From positions 124,001 through 188,000 of IMG/VR virus record IMGVR_UViG_3300029893_000001: a stretch of DNA of 64,000 nucleotides; one strand, written 5' to 3'. The position numbers and the translations under genes were made by a program. This document shows, in pieces, positions 2,595-7,041 of the stretch. The notes beneath the pieces were generated by a model that was not told where the DNA came from, ran no database searches, and saw only the letters and a list, made by a program, of their open reading frames with translations. Position 1 is the first letter of the stretch. Every line of letters starts with the position of its first letter.

Positions 2595-2727
2595 TTTGTG
2601 GACTGCTGGGATACCACGGCCATCTACCCAACCAGCCCCTAGCAACCACTAGATGGTACGTACGTTATTACGCCCGCACGCTGGCGGAGGGAGTATTGTT
2701 GGAGGGAACTCCCACAGAACCCACAAA
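2595..2727 (-). ncRNA. orphan structured RNA
   Basis: Closing helix TTTGTGG..CTG.GGGA/TCCC.GCAG.CCACAAA; internal GGGAGT/ACTCCC and CCATCTA/TAGATGG helices. Confidence 0.4.
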
Positions 2728-2876
2728 GTGACGACAGGATTTGTCAGGGACGCTTTTGAGGTGCGACCGTATCACTACAGTTGTGTCTACCAATTTCCAC
2801 CACAGCAGCCAAGTGGCTGCTGACGGGATTCGAACCCGCATGCACTTGTATGTAGTCCCGTGACAGCATTCGTCAC
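2728..2876 (-). ncRNA. YrlA-type Y RNA (Ro-binding stem plus circularly permuted tRNA mimic)
   Basis: GTGACGA-ATGC-TGTCA(C)GGGAC-TACAT stem encloses a T-arm GCGGGTTCGAATCCCGT, a looped acceptor CAGCAGCCA/TGGCTGCTG and a D-arm TGGTGGAAATTGGTAGACAC, in T-acceptor-D order. Confidence 0.8.
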
Positions 2877-3094: not shown

Positions 3095-3946
3095 TCAAGC
3101 ACTTTTCTCTGGGCGCTCTACCAGCTCCCACGGAGGGTGGGGCGAGACGAACGCTGAGGCCCCTTGGTGACCACCCCCACCGAACATCTCTGCAAGTTTG
3201 GCAGCGTCGAAGTTTCCGTTGGATCGTACAGAGTACTTGAACGTCCCGTTCGAGCGCTGAAACCAGCCCACAGCAAAGTAATTCGCCGGGGCTAGTTCAT
3301 TCAAAAGTGAGCTGATATTGATCCCAGAGGCATTCACTACAGGGACGTCATGGTAGCCCGCAAACTTAGCAAGCCTCACATTCTTCTTGCAGTCTGTGAT
3401 TGCAATGCGCTCTGCCCGCAAAACTGCCTCACCAACCGTAAGTACCGATGTCATGTTGTTCTCGATCTGAGAAGCCAGCCATGACCACGTCTGAAAATCC
3501 CCAAGAGGATAACTAAAGATGGCAGCGCTGACGATGTGGGAATTTGGCATGGTCCAACGCCAAATGTCCCGATCTTCAACATAGTCAACGAGCAAAGGTC
3601 TCTTCTGGCCTGGATGAAAGAAATCCCACGCCATACCAGCGCCACTACGATTCATGTCAAAGAGACAGAAGTCCAGACCGTGGCATCTAGCCTCATTTGT
3701 CTTATGGTGATCGATGACGGTGAGCTTTCGAGCCCTGGCCGCGTAATCAACCAACTCGTTGCGAGTTGGACAATAGTCTATGATGTAGACTTCTCGTCCA
3801 TCCACGTCGAAGACATCTGTAGGCCAATAGTTCGCAGGGACATATTCCGCAGCGCCTCCGAACTTGCGCCATGCTGCCCACGCGGCAGTCCATCCGTCAG
3901 CGCAGTCACCGTGGTATACAACCAAAATGTTCTTACGATCAGTCAT
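3095..3946 (-). CDS. DHH/DHHA1 family phosphoesterase
   Basis: YHGDCADG, IID, DHH, SGA and GGGGH motifs. Confidence 0.9.
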   Translation of the reverse strand: MTDRKNILVVYHGDCADGWTAAWAAWRKFGGAAEYVPANYWPTDVFDVDGREVYIIDYCPTRNELVDYAARARKLTVIDHHKTNEARCHGLDFCLFDMNRSGAGMAWDFFHPGQKRPLLVDYVEDRDIWRWTMPNSHIVSAAIFSYPLGDFQTWSWLASQIENNMTSVLTVGEAVLRAERIAITDCKKNVRLAKFAGYHDVPVVNASGINISSLLNELAPANYFAVGWFQRSNGTFKYSVRSNGNFDAAKLAEMFGGGGHQGASAFVSPHPPWELVERPEKSA

Positions 3947-4266
3947 GAACGACTCGATTCCTTCGACTCCAACAACTCCTCAACGACGCACCATCCTTCT
4001 ACCCACGAGACGTACTCATTCCAGGAAAACCCAAGGAATTCGTGCAATGGCTTTGTACTATTTGAGTTGTGCCAAGCGTCGATGGCCGTATCAAGCACTT
4101 CGTCCAAATCTTGACCCTCGAACTCTCCAGCCAACGCACGAGTTACGAAGCTACGAGAGCTAAAGTCGACTCGCGGGCTCCGCACCACAAACATGAGAAG
4201 CTTGAGAACTCTAGGAGTAATCCAAGACAGCATGACGTCCTCTTTAAAAAGAGGCGAGGCCAGCAT
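3943..4266 (-). CDS. hypothetical protein
   Basis: ORF whose stop overlaps the DHH start (ATGA); start uncertain. Confidence 0.6.
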   Translation of the reverse strand: MLASPLFKEDVMLSWITPRVLKLLMFVVRSPRVDFSSRSFVTRALAGEFEGQDLDEVLDTAIDAWHNSNSTKPLHEFLGFSWNEYVSWVEGWCVVEELLESKESSRS

Positions 4267-4344
4267 AGCCTTGCCGGCCCCGCCGAGTTTTGCTGTATTC
4301 TATGAATACGGCATCCTGTCCATTCTATCACACCAACGGCGTTT

Positions 4345-4728
4345 AATCTCGTGTATTAGATCTGAGTGTCTGCGTCATTCTGTTAGACCACCTCTCCGCA
4401 CGTAGCTCAATCCAGGAGGGGATTAGGGGAGGGGTCAAGATTGAGCTACGTGCGGAAAGGGCTGGATTCGCACCAGCATTTCAGACATGTCATCACGAGA
4501 ATTCGAGATGGTGATCGGACAAGACCTCCAAACTTAGGGAATAGCCTCAGCTTTACGTCTAAGTCCGAAGTAGCGCTGCCTCTTCCAGTTGGGCTACCTC
4601 CCCATACTCAGCGGGGAAGGAAGGATTCGAACCTCCACTGTAGCGTCTTCAGATCAGTTTGATTCTGAGTTTGGTCCCTACGGAAATCCCAAGGGAAACC
4701 CGAGTACAAGTCGGAACCCCGGGGAACT
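4345..4728 (-). ncRNA. ncRNA with two circularly permuted tRNA-like domains
   Basis: Domain 1 at 4564-4653 and domain 2 at about 4345-4503, each in T-arm / closed acceptor / D-arm order; G-U pairs only work on the minus strand; own promoter motif at 4736-4751. Confidence 0.75.
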
Positions 4729-4778: not shown

Positions 4779-5519
4779 TTACTGGTTGCTCTCAGCAAAC
4801 ACGTAGCCAAAAAGGCTATCAGCAATCTGCTCGCGACGAATCTCGTACGAGTTCGCCTCTTCTCGCGCAAACTTAACTGCGTTTTGAAGCTTCGCAATGC
4901 GGGCCAAAAGGTCGTCCTTGCGATCCTGCGTGAGGGCGGCGGAATAGTGAATCGTTTTCCAGTATCCAACGACCACATCTTCCGAGACCTCCTTCACCTG
5001 AGCGGGATGCTCCTTAGTTGCCTCATAGAGAACAACCGGCTTGATGGTCTTCTTTGTCTTCGCCGACTCAGAGGGCTGAGTGCGGTAAGCAGACTGCCCC
5101 GGATCCCAATCCCACGTTTGTGAAGGGTCAAGAACGGGAAGCTTCGACACGAAAGTGTGCAAGTCTACGAGCTGCTTCTCTAGAAAGAGCAAGTAGGTTA
5201 CCGGAACGTCGGACACAAGGACTTTTCCGTCTACAACGACGTTCGCAGTAGCCTTGAGGTTTGCCTTGTCCTTCGTGAAGGTGATGTCAAACATCTCGGC
5301 CAAACACGTCTGCACGTCATTCAGAACGTTCTTTGCACGTAGCTGAATCTTCTGCGACTCGGGAGGAAAGCGTTCGCCATCCTCGTTGGTTGGCGAGTAA
5401 GTACGCTCGCGTCCTTCATACAGAGAAGGTACCTGAGACTTCTTGTGGAGGTCGGTTAGAGACCGGTTCGAAGATGCCTTCACGCCCTTCTCAATTGCAA
5501 GGATCTGGTTGAGTTTCAT
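4779..5519 (-). CDS. conserved uncharacterised coiled-coil protein (MKLNQILAIEKGVK..; recalled as DUF7873-like)
   Basis: 246 aa, good RBS (GGAG), helical N- and C-termini around a beta-rich insert. The family name is from memory only. Confidence 0.8.
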   Translation of the reverse strand: MKLNQILAIEKGVKASSNRSLTDLHKKSQVPSLYEGRERTYSPTNEDGERFPPESQKIQLRAKNVLNDVQTCLAEMFDITFTKDKANLKATANVVVDGKVLVSDVPVTYLLFLEKQLVDLHTFVSKLPVLDPSQTWDWDPGQSAYRTQPSESAKTKKTIKPVVLYEATKEHPAQVKEVSEDVVVGYWKTIHYSAALTQDRKDDLLARIAKLQNAVKFAREEANSYEIRREQIADSLFGYVFAESNQ

Positions 5520-6158: not shown

Positions 6159-6632
6159 CTACAACACTTCAGCGTAGGACTGACCACGCCTAATTCTACC
6201 AACGCAACTATGTGCGTGTCCAGTCTGCCGCGCAACTTCGCGATCAGAGAGACCGCGAGATAGTAACGCCCTAATTTTCCTAACCTCAGATGCGAGAAGC
6301 AATCTTCTTCTACTAGGCCGAGAGGATGACAAGGCCTTGTCTATCTGACGTTGCCGTCTCATTCCCATAAGAGGGTACAATCGCTGCATTAGATCAACGG
6401 CAGGAAAACCCTTGACAGTGAAGAAAAACACACGTTTCCATCTTGGGTTCTTCTTGTCCTGGTAGGACCCTACGGTCCCGTGCCCAACAATCAGCCGTAC
6501 CTTTTGTACCACATCTTCATCCGTCATTTGAACAGAAATGCGTGGAGAAGACGGATCGGAAGGAGGCCCCCTCAAAAATGAACCTTCTCCCTCAAGAAGG
6601 CCTGCCAACCAAGATAAATCAGTATCAGTCAT
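6159..6632 (-). CDS. LAGLIDADG homing endonuclease with C-terminal HTH
   Basis: WLAGLLEGEGSF, ISVQMTD, C-terminal GLSDREVARQTG. Confidence 0.85.
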   Translation of the reverse strand: MTDTDLSWLAGLLEGEGSFLRGPPSDPSSPRISVQMTDEDVVQKVRLIVGHGTVGSYQDKKNPRWKRVFFFTVKGFPAVDLMQRLYPLMGMRRQRQIDKALSSSRPSRRRLLLASEVRKIRALLSRGLSDREVARQTGHAHSCVGRIRRGQSYAEVL

Positions 6633-6643
6633 ATGGTGGGTAA

Positions 6644-7041
6644 TGGACCCGCTGGTATCGAAACCAGGTCCTCGAACGCCTAACTGACTCCGCTACGTGT
6701 GTAGTCTCATTTACCCGCAGATTACGCGCTGCAGGAAGCCGAGACAAGCACCGCGAGGGGCACAACGGCCCTCCACCACTAACCCTTTAGACTTAGCTCG
6801 GTCGGGTCAGAAACCGAGGTGCAACCCGAGTCGATGAGCCGCAGAGGACTATCGGGTGTCCTCCCCTGCGACACCTCACGCCGCGAGGGGCAGAGGCTCG
6901 GCGGTGCCATTGTCGTTAGCAACGACATTGCCGAAGAGGGAAACTACGTTGTTCGCAGTTCTTCATGGGCTTTTAACGAGGCCAGCCCACCTCGACACGC
7001 AGAATCAGGTCGGTTCGTCCGAGTCGAAGCCTTTCGGGCCC
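6644..7041 (-). ncRNA. ssrA: tmRNA; tag reading frame 6956-6876 encodes ANNVVSLFGNVVANDNGTAEPLPLAA*
   Basis: Acceptor GGGCCCG/CGGGTCC-A with the G3:U70 pair, GGCTTCGAC, PK1 (GAGG-TGGGC..CCTC..GCCCA), GACTACACACGTAG, tag ending in LAA. Confidence 0.92.

What the first reader, a model, noticed from the sequence alone, without database searches (positions are those of the whole stretch)
4535..4680. Unpaired hexamer repeats flanking tRNA-mimic domain 1: a possible multimer landing strip
SEEN: between the outer TAGGGA/TCCCTA helix and the tRNA-like domain, both strands carry similar 6-7 nt units: CAAACT-CAGAAT-CAAACT on the 5' side and CGGACT-TAGACG-(T)AAAGCT-GAGGCT on the 3' side (about NARRCT). 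Apart from the first 3' unit, which overlaps the CTTCGGA helix, they do not pair with each other. INFERENCE: these are periodic single-stranded sites for one subunit each of an oligomer of the upstream protein, as with TRAP or Hfq repeat binding.
Basis: partly seen in the sequence, partly recalled or inferred. Interest (0 to 1): 0.6.

Follow-up and report, generated by a model that had tools for sequence, protein, structure and literature searches.

The report
Six-base repeats in DUF7873-linked tRNA-mimic RNA
The short repeats are real: they are the most conserved non-tRNA part of a widespread, apparently undescribed RNA with two tRNA look-alike domains that sits directly behind a protein gene of unknown function (DUF7873) in hundreds of bacteria and phages, and they look like a periodic protein-docking track, though binding is untested.

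Summary
Read on the minus strand, 4683-4531 is a circularly permuted tRNA-like domain (T arm, 7-bp acceptor closed by a loop, D arm) held in a long stem. That is the topology of bacterial Y RNA (YrlA). It fails YrlA membership: 16 bits against a 69-bit threshold, no Ro60 gene adjacent, no GNCGAA motif.

The repeats exist. Their family phase is A-R-N-Y-U-N:
- 5' side: AAACUC AGAAUC AAACUG (4672-4655).
- 3' side: AAGCUG AGGCUA (4553-4542).
- After the outer helix: AGUUUG (4534-4529).

The upstream 246-aa gene is DUF7873 (PF25283). The same RNA follows it in 83/84 bacterial and at least 65/82 viral loci, one gene and one strong RNA match in each of five whole genomes. Across 122 non-redundant members A1 and U5 are 86-100% conserved. 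Lag-6 autocorrelation is 0.43 against about 0.22 background.

The outer helix covaries strongly; the repeats show no covariation. Eight Streptomyces loci keep the repeats but have lost tRNA-like domain 1.

This fits base-specific recognition of largely unpaired units. DUF7873 is the obvious candidate and is predicted to form a symmetric homodimer (0.69, controls 0.00). A TRAP- or Hfq-like ring is not shown, and neither family's criteria are met.

The parts
4779..5519 (-). DUF7873 (PF25283) gene, 246 aa: the 'upstream protein'
   Evidence: ORF list. 7498 homologues, all carrying PF25283. No PHROG or NCBIfam match. AF2 model pLDDT 89.7. Homodimer predicted at 0.69 against control 0.00. One 215-nt contig at 5066-5280 in an RNA library.
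4675..4680 (-). Outer helix, 5' strand (UAGGGA)
   Evidence: Pairs with 4535-4540. The homologous helix covaries (GGAGCG/YGCUCC in bacteria, AGAGAA/UUCUCU in L102). MI 0.5-1.25 with 82-100% pairable.
4655..4672 (-). 5' array of three A-R-N-Y-U-N units: AAACUC AGAAUC AAACUG, followed by A4654
   Evidence: Sequence. In 122 non-redundant members, family units 2-4 have A1 at 99/97/61% and U5 at 96/89/86%. Lag-6 autocorrelation is 0.43. Most members have 3-4 units.
4642..4653 (-). Inner stem, 5' strand (UCUGAAG-A-CGCU); continues the tRNA-like 'anticodon' stem
   Evidence: Pairs with 4564-4577. All three differences in L020 keep the pairs.
4578..4641 (-). Permuted tRNA-like core of domain 1. Variable loop ACAGU; T arm 4636-4620 (GGAGG-UUCGAAU-CCUUC); acceptor 3' strand 4619-4613; closing loop 4612-4604; acceptor 5' strand 4603-4597; D arm 4594-4578
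   Evidence: Read from the sequence. Sub-threshold Rfam YrlA match of 16.2 bits at 4561-4653. T arm, acceptor and D arm pairs covary in 35 sequences. Model R1 scores 99.1 bits.
4564..4577 (-). Inner stem, 3' strand (AGCG-CUA-CUUCGGA)
   Evidence: Complement of 4642-4653.
4542..4553 (-). 3' array of two canonical units: AAGCUG AGGCUA, followed by U4541
   Evidence: Family composition with nothing forced. Penultimate unit: A89 R94 N Y89 U91 C72. Last unit: A92 R95 R93 Y96 U90. Spacer U 87%.
4535..4540 (-). Outer helix, 3' strand (UCCCUA)
   Evidence: See the 5' strand.
4529..4534 (-).
   Evidence: Family composition A95 R99 N Y90 U93 C72 at the first six bases after the helix.
4367..4487 (-). 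tRNA-like domain 2. Stem UGUCUG 4487-4482 / CAGACA 4372-4367; T arm 4477-4461; acceptor 4460-4454 / 4397-4391, extended by a 15-bp helix with a 26-nt C-rich loop; D arm about 4389-4374
   Evidence: Sequence. The 401-nt fold has z = -4.65. A homologous second domain is present in bacterial loci.
4245..4284 (-). Intrinsic terminator (13-bp stem, 10 G-C pairs, then UCUUUUU): likely 3' end of the DUF7873 + RNA transcript
   Evidence: No sigma-70-like promoter was found between the gene and the RNA.

Best explanation
The interval is the first module of a roughly 320-nt noncoding RNA that is co-transcribed with, or made just downstream of, a DUF7873 gene.

Architecture of the RNA:
- Two circularly permuted tRNA mimics (T arm, D arm, 7-bp acceptor stem closed by a loop), each held on a stem.
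- The first mimic sits inside a large internal loop closed by a covarying outer helix.
- That loop is lined on both strands by units of A-R-N-Y-U-N at an exact 6-nt period: typically four on the 5' strand (three in this phage), two on the 3' strand, and one more just after the helix.

Proposed mechanism: the units are largely unpaired, base-specific docking sites for a protein. The most likely protein is DUF7873 itself. It would assemble as a two-fold dimer, or several dimers, on the two antiparallel strands that carry the same motif. The array plus outer helix would then play the part that the Ro60-binding stem plays in Y RNAs, and the tRNA mimics would be the presented or effector part.

Shown here: the RNA family, its architecture, the conservation and periodicity of the units, the absence of covariation in them, and the strict gene-RNA linkage.

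Inferred: that the units are unpaired in vivo, that DUF7873 is the ligand, and the stoichiometry. The biological role of the particle is unknown.
For: Architecture:
- Read from the sequence.
- Covariation supports the outer helix, T arm, acceptor and D arm in 35 sequences.
- Model R1 scores 99.1 bits on the window.

Linkage to DUF7873:
- The RNA was found behind DUF7873 in a close phage relative and in Polymorphospora rubra.
- A permuted tRNA-like domain lies downstream in 156/163 loci by my parser.
- R1 hits directly downstream in 83/84 bacterial and at least 65/82 viral loci, a median of 41 nt after the stop.
- There is one gene and one adjacent strong hit in each of 5 genomes from Streptomyces, Sorangium, Myxococcus, Anaerolineales and Blastocatellia.
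- Other neighbouring genes are not conserved.

Periodicity and conservation:
- Lag-6 autocorrelation is 0.43 and lag-12 is 0.39, against about 0.22 background.
- A1 and U5 are 86-100% conserved, while N3 and N6 are free.

Recognition rather than pairing:
- RNAalifold leaves the arrays unpaired.
- Pairability of the variable positions equals the shuffled expectation, for example 0.64 against 0.60.
- The MI scan ranks outer-helix pairs on top. No array-array pair combines high MI with high pairability.
- Strand unit numbers are unequal (4 against 2).

Autonomy of the module: 8 Streptomyces loci keep the helix and arrays but replace tRNA-like domain 1 with a hairpin.

Protein self-association: ipSAE 0.69 against best control 0.00, runs agree in at least 95% of contacts, partner pLDDT at least 87. 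That mark was reached by 20 of 30 proteins solved as pairs and 1 of 23 solved as single chains.
Against: - No experiment or computation here shows RNA binding by DUF7873. Its pI is near neutral (5.7-8.5) and its fold matches no known RNA-binding protein.
- The predicted dimer is closed and symmetric, which does not by itself explain 6-7 sites.
- The consensus unit is partly self-complementary (YUNAR pentamers). About 64% of members could form a 4-5 bp mini-helix between the strands, and this window has a perfect 5-bp CUCAG/CUGAG match. Some pairing therefore cannot be excluded.
- Shuffle tests ignore phylogeny.
- The RNA itself was not seen in the one metatranscriptome that holds part of this phage.
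- Seventeen viral loci lacked a hit by my distance filter. Some of these are filter artefacts and some may be real absences.
Confidence: 0.5

Rival explanations
1. The units are structural. The two arrays, and surplus 5' units among themselves, pair through their self-complementary YUNAR/ARNYU cores into an irregular helix that merely spaces the tRNA mimic from the outer helix. No protein reads them.
For: - CUCAG 4669-4665 / CUGAG 4550-4546 is a perfect 5-bp match in the window.
- The U5-A1' and A1-U5' oppositions are pairable in 84-100% of members by consensus.
- Y4:R2' for units 1-2 is slightly enriched over shuffles (0.85 against 0.78).
Against: - The central variable bases do not covary (GC 65, CC 15, and so on; observed 0.64 against expected 0.60).
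- R2:Y4' is pairable in only 21-36%, mostly A-C.
- Three different 5' units are equally good partners for one 3' site.
- Unit numbers differ (4 against 2).
- RNAalifold predicts no pairs there.
- True helices in the same RNA show MI 0.5-1.25.
- A spacer helix would not need invariant A and U.
Confidence: 0.2
2. The units are docking sites for another, host-encoded or phage-encoded factor rather than DUF7873. Candidates are Ro60/Rsr, a KH/S1-domain nuclease such as PNPase, or a tRNA-handling enzyme. DUF7873 would act elsewhere on the RNA or not at all.
For: - The tRNA-mimic topology is that of YrlA, whose known partner is Ro60 (PMC4201824).
- The phage encodes an Rsr orthologue: 2NVO E = 2.8e-21.
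- CUGAAG recalls the GNCGAA(N)G Ro60 motif and the CUGAAUGC of this phage's canonical YrlA copies.
Against: - Rsr lies about 31 kb away and has its own five or more YrlA-like RNAs beside it.
- The RNA is always next to DUF7873, with no other conserved neighbour.
- The window has no GNCGAA between 4680 and 4640.
- Rfam YrlA scores are far below threshold.
Confidence: 0.2
3. The 6-nt period is a coding signal. In frame the 5' array reads as alternating polar and hydrophobic residues (K/R/N/S then L/F/I/V), for example as a tmRNA-like tag or a small peptide.
For: - The N-A-N N-U-N pattern, with the most variation at every third base.
- A tRNA-like domain lies next to it.
- 35/106 members encode ACCA after the acceptor strand.
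Against: - No conserved start or stop. The window frame ends at UGA 4653-4651, but the 84%-identical relative L020 reads on through the whole RNA.
- Streptomyces copies use AGA/AGG and never CGN at the 'basic' position.
- The same motif recurs on the 3' strand and after the helix, out of frame (7 nt apart).
- The window has no G3:U70.
- ARAGORN and Rfam call no tmRNA here, although both find the phage's real tmRNA at 6641-7041.
Confidence: 0.04
4. Chance resemblance among a few short words in one intergenic region.
For: - In the window alone the units are imperfect.
- No strict run of three or more exists.
- The local fold is not better than shuffles (z = -0.81).
Against: Conserved in phase in 122 non-redundant homologues from at least six bacterial phyla and from phages.
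Confidence: 0.01

Closest known systems
Bacterial Y RNA of the YrlA type with Ro60/Rsr (Rfam RF02553; Chen et al. 2014, PMC4201824)
   Same: - A permuted tRNA mimic: T arm, D arm, and an acceptor-like stem closed by a loop, with the RNA ends leaving through the anticodon-side stem.
- A modular build: a protein-binding stem plus a tRNA-like effector part.
- Often two modules in tandem.
- A 7-bp acceptor as in M. smegmatis YrlA, which is cut by RNase P and receives CCA in vivo.
- Found in both bacteria and phages.
   Different: - Scores 16 bits (relatives 30-32) against a gathering score of 69.
- Lies next to DUF7873, not Ro60.
- No GNCGAA(N)G motif.
- In place of the Ro60-binding helix it has an internal loop lined with A-R-N-Y-U-N units at a 6-nt period.
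- The same phage carries canonical YrlA copies and Rsr elsewhere, so the two systems coexist.
TRAP bound to the trp leader (Bacillus)
   Same: A short purine-containing word (N-A-R) repeated at a fixed short spacing on single-stranded RNA. The idea is one protein subunit per repeat.
   Different: - TRAP needs about 9-11 (G/U)AG triplets with 2-3 nt non-conserved spacers on one strand.
- Here there are 3-4 + 2 + 1 units on two antiparallel strands, an exact 6-nt period and an invariant U in the 'spacer'.
- TRAP is an 11-mer ring of about 75-aa subunits. DUF7873 is 246 aa, unrelated, and predicted to be a closed dimer.
Hfq distal-face (A-R-N)n binding
   Same: The first half of each unit is A-R-N.
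   Different: - Only every second triplet is A-R-N; the other is Y-U-N.
- No Sm-fold protein is involved.
Two-piece tmRNA from circularly permuted ssrA genes
   Same: - A permuted gene order: the 3' tRNA half comes before the 5' half.
- The acceptor-closing segment looks like a trailer plus a leader (A in 85% of members, ACCA in 33%).
   Different: - No alanine identity pair.
- No tag reading frame with a conserved stop.
- A canonical D arm is present.
- Not detected by tmRNA models, which do find the phage's own tmRNA.
Cas7 backbone on crRNA (6-nt periodicity)
   Same: Only the arithmetic: one protein subunit per 6 nt of single-stranded RNA.
   Different: - The Foldseek rows to CasC had probability at or below 0.15, TM about 0.14 and rmsd above 20 A, and were not reproduced by the second aligner.
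- There is no evidence of kinship.
- crRNA spacers are not sequence-conserved.

Membership tests
YrlA / bacterial Y RNA (RF02553) | Reaches Rfam's gathering score (69 bits) | tested here: not met
   16.2 bits, E = 2, at 4561-4653(-). Bacterial relatives score 30-32 bits. This phage's canonical copies score 55-62 bits.
YrlA / bacterial Y RNA (RF02553) | tRNA-like domain with T arm, D arm and an acceptor-like stem closed by a loop, with the ends leaving by the opposite stem | tested here: met
   Read from the sequence. All three elements covary in 35 homologues.
YrlA / bacterial Y RNA (RF02553) | Encoded beside a Ro60/Rsr gene (within about 4 kb in Chen et al. 2014) | tested here: not met
   Rsr lies at genome 95509-97149 and the RNA at 128531-128683, about 31 kb apart. 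In bacteria the neighbour is DUF7873.
YrlA / bacterial Y RNA (RF02553) | GNCGAA(N0-1)G motif in the 5' strand of the Ro60-binding stem | tested here: not met
   No G-N-C-G-A-A in 4690-4640 of the minus strand. The phage's canonical copies have (G/A)(C/U)GAAUGC.
YrlA / bacterial Y RNA (RF02553) | Bound by Ro60 in vivo | not testable with these tools
   Needs immunoprecipitation.
TRAP-type repeat RNA | About 9-11 (G/U)AG triplets separated by 2-3 non-conserved bases on one strand | tested here: not met
   3 + 2 + 1 units in the window and 4 + 2 + 1 in the family. The period is exactly 6, with U5 at 86-100% and Y4 conserved.
TRAP-type repeat RNA | A TRAP (MtrB) protein encoded by the organism or locus | tested here: not met
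   The linked protein is the 246-aa DUF7873. It has no PDB sequence match (best E = 0.24) and no fold match to TRAP. The rest of the genome was not searched for MtrB.
Hfq (A-R-N)n site | Runs of consecutive A-R-N triplets | tested here: not met
   A-R-N alternates with Y-U-N.
tmRNA (one- or two-piece) | Detected by tmRNA models; G3:U70; tag frame with a stop | tested here: not met
   ARAGORN and Rfam find only the tmRNA at 6641-7041. The acceptor is GGGGAGG/CUUCCCC with G3-C70. The frame is not conserved in L020.
Circularly permuted tRNA gene (functional tRNA) | A complete anticodon arm after processing | tested here: not met
   In the window the anticodon-side stem runs on into the long stem (4642-4653 / 4564-4577) with no loop.
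DUF7873-associated RNA (family defined here, model R1) | Full-length match to R1 directly downstream of a PF25283 gene, with outer helix, A-R-N-Y-U-N arrays and a permuted tRNA-like core | tested here: met
   99.1 bits, model positions 1-147, at 4531-4683(-). The window sequence is itself one of the 35 seed sequences, so this score is partly by construction. Non-seed members score up to 133 bits.

The most novel reading that the evidence does not exclude
DUF7873 and its downstream RNA form a previously unrecognised ribonucleoprotein, present in thousands of bacteria (Streptomyces, Myxococcus, Sorangium, Chloroflexota, Acidobacteriota) and in many large phages. Copies of DUF7873 would read a 6-nt-periodic single-stranded A-R-N-Y-U-N track on two antiparallel strands and so display one or two tRNA mimics. 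This would be a Ro60-independent counterpart of Y RNPs with a new mode of periodic RNA recognition.
Probability: 0.4. Interest if true: 0.85.

Novelty: new variant of a known kind. Interest (0 to 1): 0.72.

Why it matters
- Y-RNA-like tRNA mimics are so far known in bacteria only as partners of Ro60. This one pairs a YrlA-type mimic with a different, uncharacterised protein in a strict one-gene, one-RNA module.
- The module occurs in well-studied genera (Streptomyces, Myxococcus) as well as in large phages that also carry tRNAs, tmRNA and Ro60.
- It gives DUF7873 (about 7,500 sequences) its first functional lead.
- It adds a sizeable structured RNA family that is absent from Rfam 15.
- The exact 6-nt repeat grammar makes the protein-RNA hypothesis directly testable by mutation and footprinting.
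- Loci that have lost the tRNA mimic but kept the repeats offer a natural dissection of the two modules.

Tried and rejected
- Rfam, at gathering and E-value thresholds, on the window and five bacterial loci: only sub-threshold YrlA.
- blastn of the region against GenBank phages: no match.
- A single-protein scan of viral contigs found nothing. The alignment-based scans worked.
- PHROGs and NCBIfam for DUF7873: nothing.
- Fold searches:
  - Foldseek against the PDB gave weak rows to Hsp110 and Cas7/CasC (probability 0.8 and at or below 0.15, TM below 0.2). I reject these as evidence.
  - VIA-align gave only generic helical bundles (Z up to 8.5).
  - The Atlas returned only DUF7873 itself.
  - The profile against PDB sequences gave nothing.
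- Pairing hypotheses tested and not supported by covariation:
  - Each 5' unit against each 3' unit, in both self-complementary registers.
  - Hairpins within the 5' array.
  - 5' unit 1 against the post-helix unit.
- Coding or tmRNA-like reading: rejected (see rivals).
- Expression: the only RNA library holding this phage shows one contig inside the DUF7873 gene and none on the RNA. Contigs cannot show absence.
- Other viral contigs sharing the exact T arm and acceptor (L010, L014-L018) are a related but distinct class: R1 scores 50-59 bits, mostly from the tRNA core, and no DUF7873 lies in the locus.

Full report
**Setting.** The window is bases 124001-188000 of a 392,328-bp IMG/VR virus record. 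On the minus strand it carries 13 tRNA genes and a tmRNA. All features discussed here lie on the minus strand.

**What the interval is.** Read 5' to 3' from 4683 down to 4531, the sequence has these parts:
- Outer helix: UAGGGA (4680-4675) pairs with UCCCUA (4540-4535).
- A 5' single-stranded stretch.
- A stem: UCUGAAG-A-CGCU (4653-4642) pairs with AGCG-CUA-CUUCGGA (4577-4564).
- A five-base variable loop.
- A canonical T arm, GGAGG-UUCGAAU-CCUUC (4636-4620).
- A 7-bp acceptor stem, CUUCCCC (4619-4613) with GGGGAGG (4603-4597), closed by a 9-nt loop.
- U-A, then a D arm (4594-4578).

This is a circularly permuted tRNA mimic whose ends leave through the anticodon side. That is the topology described for bacterial Y RNAs of the YrlA type (PMC4201824). 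Rfam gives only a 16.2-bit YrlA match against a threshold of 69 bits.

A second mimic follows at about 4487-4367. Its acceptor stem is extended by a 15-bp helix. A strong intrinsic terminator lies at 4284-4245. The 401-nt region folds far better than shuffles (z = -4.65). The 163 nt of the finding alone do not (z = -0.81).

**The same phage has the classical system elsewhere.**
- An Rsr/Ro60 orthologue lies at genome 95509-97149. It matches D. radiodurans Rsr (2NVO) at E = 2.8e-21 over its full length.
- At least five much better YrlA-like RNAs (up to 61.7 bits) carry the (C/U)GAAUGC ... CCUGUC stem.
- One of these copies lies in the window at 2725-2876.
- The element under study lacks that motif.

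**The upstream protein.**
- ORF 4779-5519 (246 aa) has no PHROG or NCBIfam match.
- It belongs to Pfam PF25283, DUF7873, with 7498 homologues at about 54% identity in Actinomycetota, Myxococcota and others.
- No paper in the library mentions DUF7873.

**The RNA travels with the protein.**
- In a close phage relative (L020, 84% identical protein) and in the Polymorphospora rubra chromosome (L021), the same permuted tRNA-like RNA follows the gene.
- I fetched 80 bacterial and 80 viral DUF7873 loci. At least 586 and 379 stretches were confirmed in the two collections.
- A simple parser finds a permuted tRNA-like domain within 700 nt of the stop in 156/163 loci.
- A covariance model (R1) built from 35 aligned examples gives full-length matches directly downstream in 83/84 bacterial and at least 65/82 viral loci. 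They start a median of 41 nt after the stop.
- Five whole genomes of 8.5-16.3 Mb from five lineages each hold exactly one DUF7873 gene and one strong R1 match, side by side.
- Other neighbouring genes are not conserved in bacteria.
- Phage relatives share a DHH/DHHA1 phosphoesterase downstream (window 3095-3946).

**The repeats.** Across the family the unit is A-R-N-Y-U-N, with this layout:
- 5' strand: after the outer helix and usually one C come typically four units, for example AAGCUG AACCUG AAGCUU GUCGUG in Streptomyces. This phage has three: AAACUC AGAAUC AAACUG.
- 3' strand: two units, then U, then the helix. Examples are AAUCUC AGACUA U in Streptomyces and AAGCUG AGGCUA U here.
- After the helix: a further unit, AGACUC in Streptomyces and AGUUUG here.

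In 122 non-redundant members the compositions are as follows:

| Unit | Composition |
|---|---|
| 5' unit 2 | A99 R89 N Y89 U96 N |
| 5' unit 3 | A97 R81 N Y81 U89 N |
| 3' penultimate | A89 R94 N Y89 U91 C72 |
| 3' last | A92 R95 R93 Y96 U90 M83 |
| post-helix | A95 R99 N Y90 U93 C72 |

A test free of my pattern gives these autocorrelations:

| Region | Lag 6 | Lag 12 | Note |
|---|---|---|---|
| 5' flank | 0.43 | 0.39 | background about 0.22 |
| 3' flank | 0.38 | 0.29 | background about 0.22 |
| Coding control | – | – | only a period of three |

**Paired or not?** The consensus is partly self-complementary. YUNAR and ARNYU pentamers are palindromic apart from their centre. In this window CUCAG (4669-4665) matches CUGAG (4550-4546), and CCAAACU (4674-4668) matches AGUUUGG (4534-4528). 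The latter even shows a compensatory change in L020.

Across the family the picture is different:
- RNAalifold leaves the arrays unpaired, while it recovers the outer helix, T arm, acceptor and D arm with many double changes.
- For every 5' unit against every 3' unit, in both registers, pairability of the variable positions equals the shuffled expectation. Examples are 0.64 against 0.60 and 0.34 against 0.32. R2:Y4' is mostly A-C.
- Only 9/116 members can form the window's alternative helix.
- In an all-against-all mutual-information scan the outer-helix pairs stand on top (MI 0.5-1.25, 82-100% pairable). No array-array pair combines high MI with high pairability.

The units are therefore conserved as bases, not as pairs.

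**The array is a module of its own.** Eight Streptomyces loci retain the outer helix and both arrays nearly unchanged but replace tRNA-like domain 1 with a 25-40 nt hairpin.

**The tRNA-like end.** In 106 parsed members the base after the acceptor 3' strand is A in 90, followed by CCA in 35. The closing loop ranges from 4 to 88 nt. This resembles M. smegmatis YrlA, which RNase P cuts and which receives CCA in vivo (PMC4201824). The window has G and no CCA. The phage's ordinary tRNA genes that I read likewise do not encode CCA.

**The protein.**
- AlphaFold2 gives a confident model: pLDDT 89.7, four long helices plus a sheet with a long hairpin.
- No trustworthy structural relative was found.
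- Two copies are predicted to bind each other through the same residues on each. Strand 183-196 pairs with strand 34-44 of the partner, with about 230 contacts and ipSAE 0.69 against a best control of 0.00. The runs agree in at least 95% of contacts and partner pLDDT is at least 87. That mark was reached by 20 of 30 proteins solved as pairs and by 1 of 23 solved as single chains. My own alignment was used, so these counts hold only roughly.
- This supports a closed two-fold dimer, not a ring.
- A two-fold protein facing two antiparallel strands that carry the same motif is an attractive fit, but that is inference.

**Coding reading rejected.** In frame the 5' array reads as (K/R/N/S)(L/F/I/V) repeats. 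Four observations argue against a coding signal:
- There is no conserved start or stop. The window stops at UGA 4653-4651, whereas L020 reads through.
- Streptomyces copies use AGA/AGG rather than CGN.
- The 3' and post-helix units are out of frame with each other.
- tmRNA models do not fire here.

**Expression.** The phage DNA occurs in subsurface and rock metagenomes. The one RNA library holding part of it shows a 215-nt contig inside the DUF7873 gene (5066-5280) and nothing on the RNA. With contigs this proves nothing either way.

**Verdict.**
Periodic, base-specific, probably unpaired sites and a tightly linked, self-associating protein are in hand.
- Binding, stoichiometry and any TRAP- or Hfq-like ring are not shown.

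Noticed in passing
G000:C1:95509-97149 (outside the window); window 2725-2876 (-): The phage encodes a Ro60/Rsr orthologue (2NVO E = 2.8e-21) and at least five canonical YrlA-like RNAs with a (C/U)GAAUGC...CCUGUC stem. One of them lies in the window.
   Followed up: partly
window 6641-7041 (-) and 6159-6632 (-): A phage tmRNA (tag ANNVVSLFGNVVANDNGTAEPLPLAA). Immediately downstream is a LAGLIDADG-motif ORF that matches an HNH-endonuclease PHROG family.
   Followed up: no
L010, L014, L016, L017, L018 (IMG/VR contigs); L009, L013: Other viral contigs carry permuted tRNA-like genes. The order is T arm, acceptor strand with encoded ACCA, an AT-rich spacer, then a GGGGAAG 5' half with a complete anticodon arm. 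Their ends lie in the variable-arm region. R1 scores 50-59 bits and no DUF7873 lies in the locus. L009 and L013 have the same tRNA in normal order with an insert of about 65 nt in the variable region.
   Followed up: partly
L027, L036, L046, L050, L075, L080, L091, L100: Eight Streptomyces DUF7873 loci keep the outer helix and hexamer arrays but have a plain hairpin in place of tRNA-like domain 1.
   Followed up: yes
L126:2232-2393 and beyond: In one viral relative the acceptor-closing loop of domain 1 holds a long insertion with an open reading frame. It may be a mobile insertion.
   Followed up: no
window 4245-4284 (-) and ORF 3943-4266 (-): The strong terminator overlaps the first ATG of the listed 107-aa ORF. 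That gene more likely starts at the second ATG (4233).
   Followed up: no
window 4674-4668 and 4534-4528 (-): CCAAACU is complementary to AGUUUGG, which gives an alternative to the outer helix. L020 shows a compensatory change (CCAAGUU/AGCUUGG). The pairing is specific to this lineage: only 9/116 family members can form it.
   Followed up: yes
window 5066-5280: A size-fractionated metatranscriptome from the same subsurface study holds an identical 215-nt contig inside the DUF7873 coding region.
   Followed up: partly
window 3095-3946 (-); L185:9244-10086: A DHH/DHHA1 phosphoesterase gene lies downstream of the DUF7873-RNA module in this phage and in a 71%-identical relative. An RNA ligase gene lies nearby in L185.
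   Followed up: no
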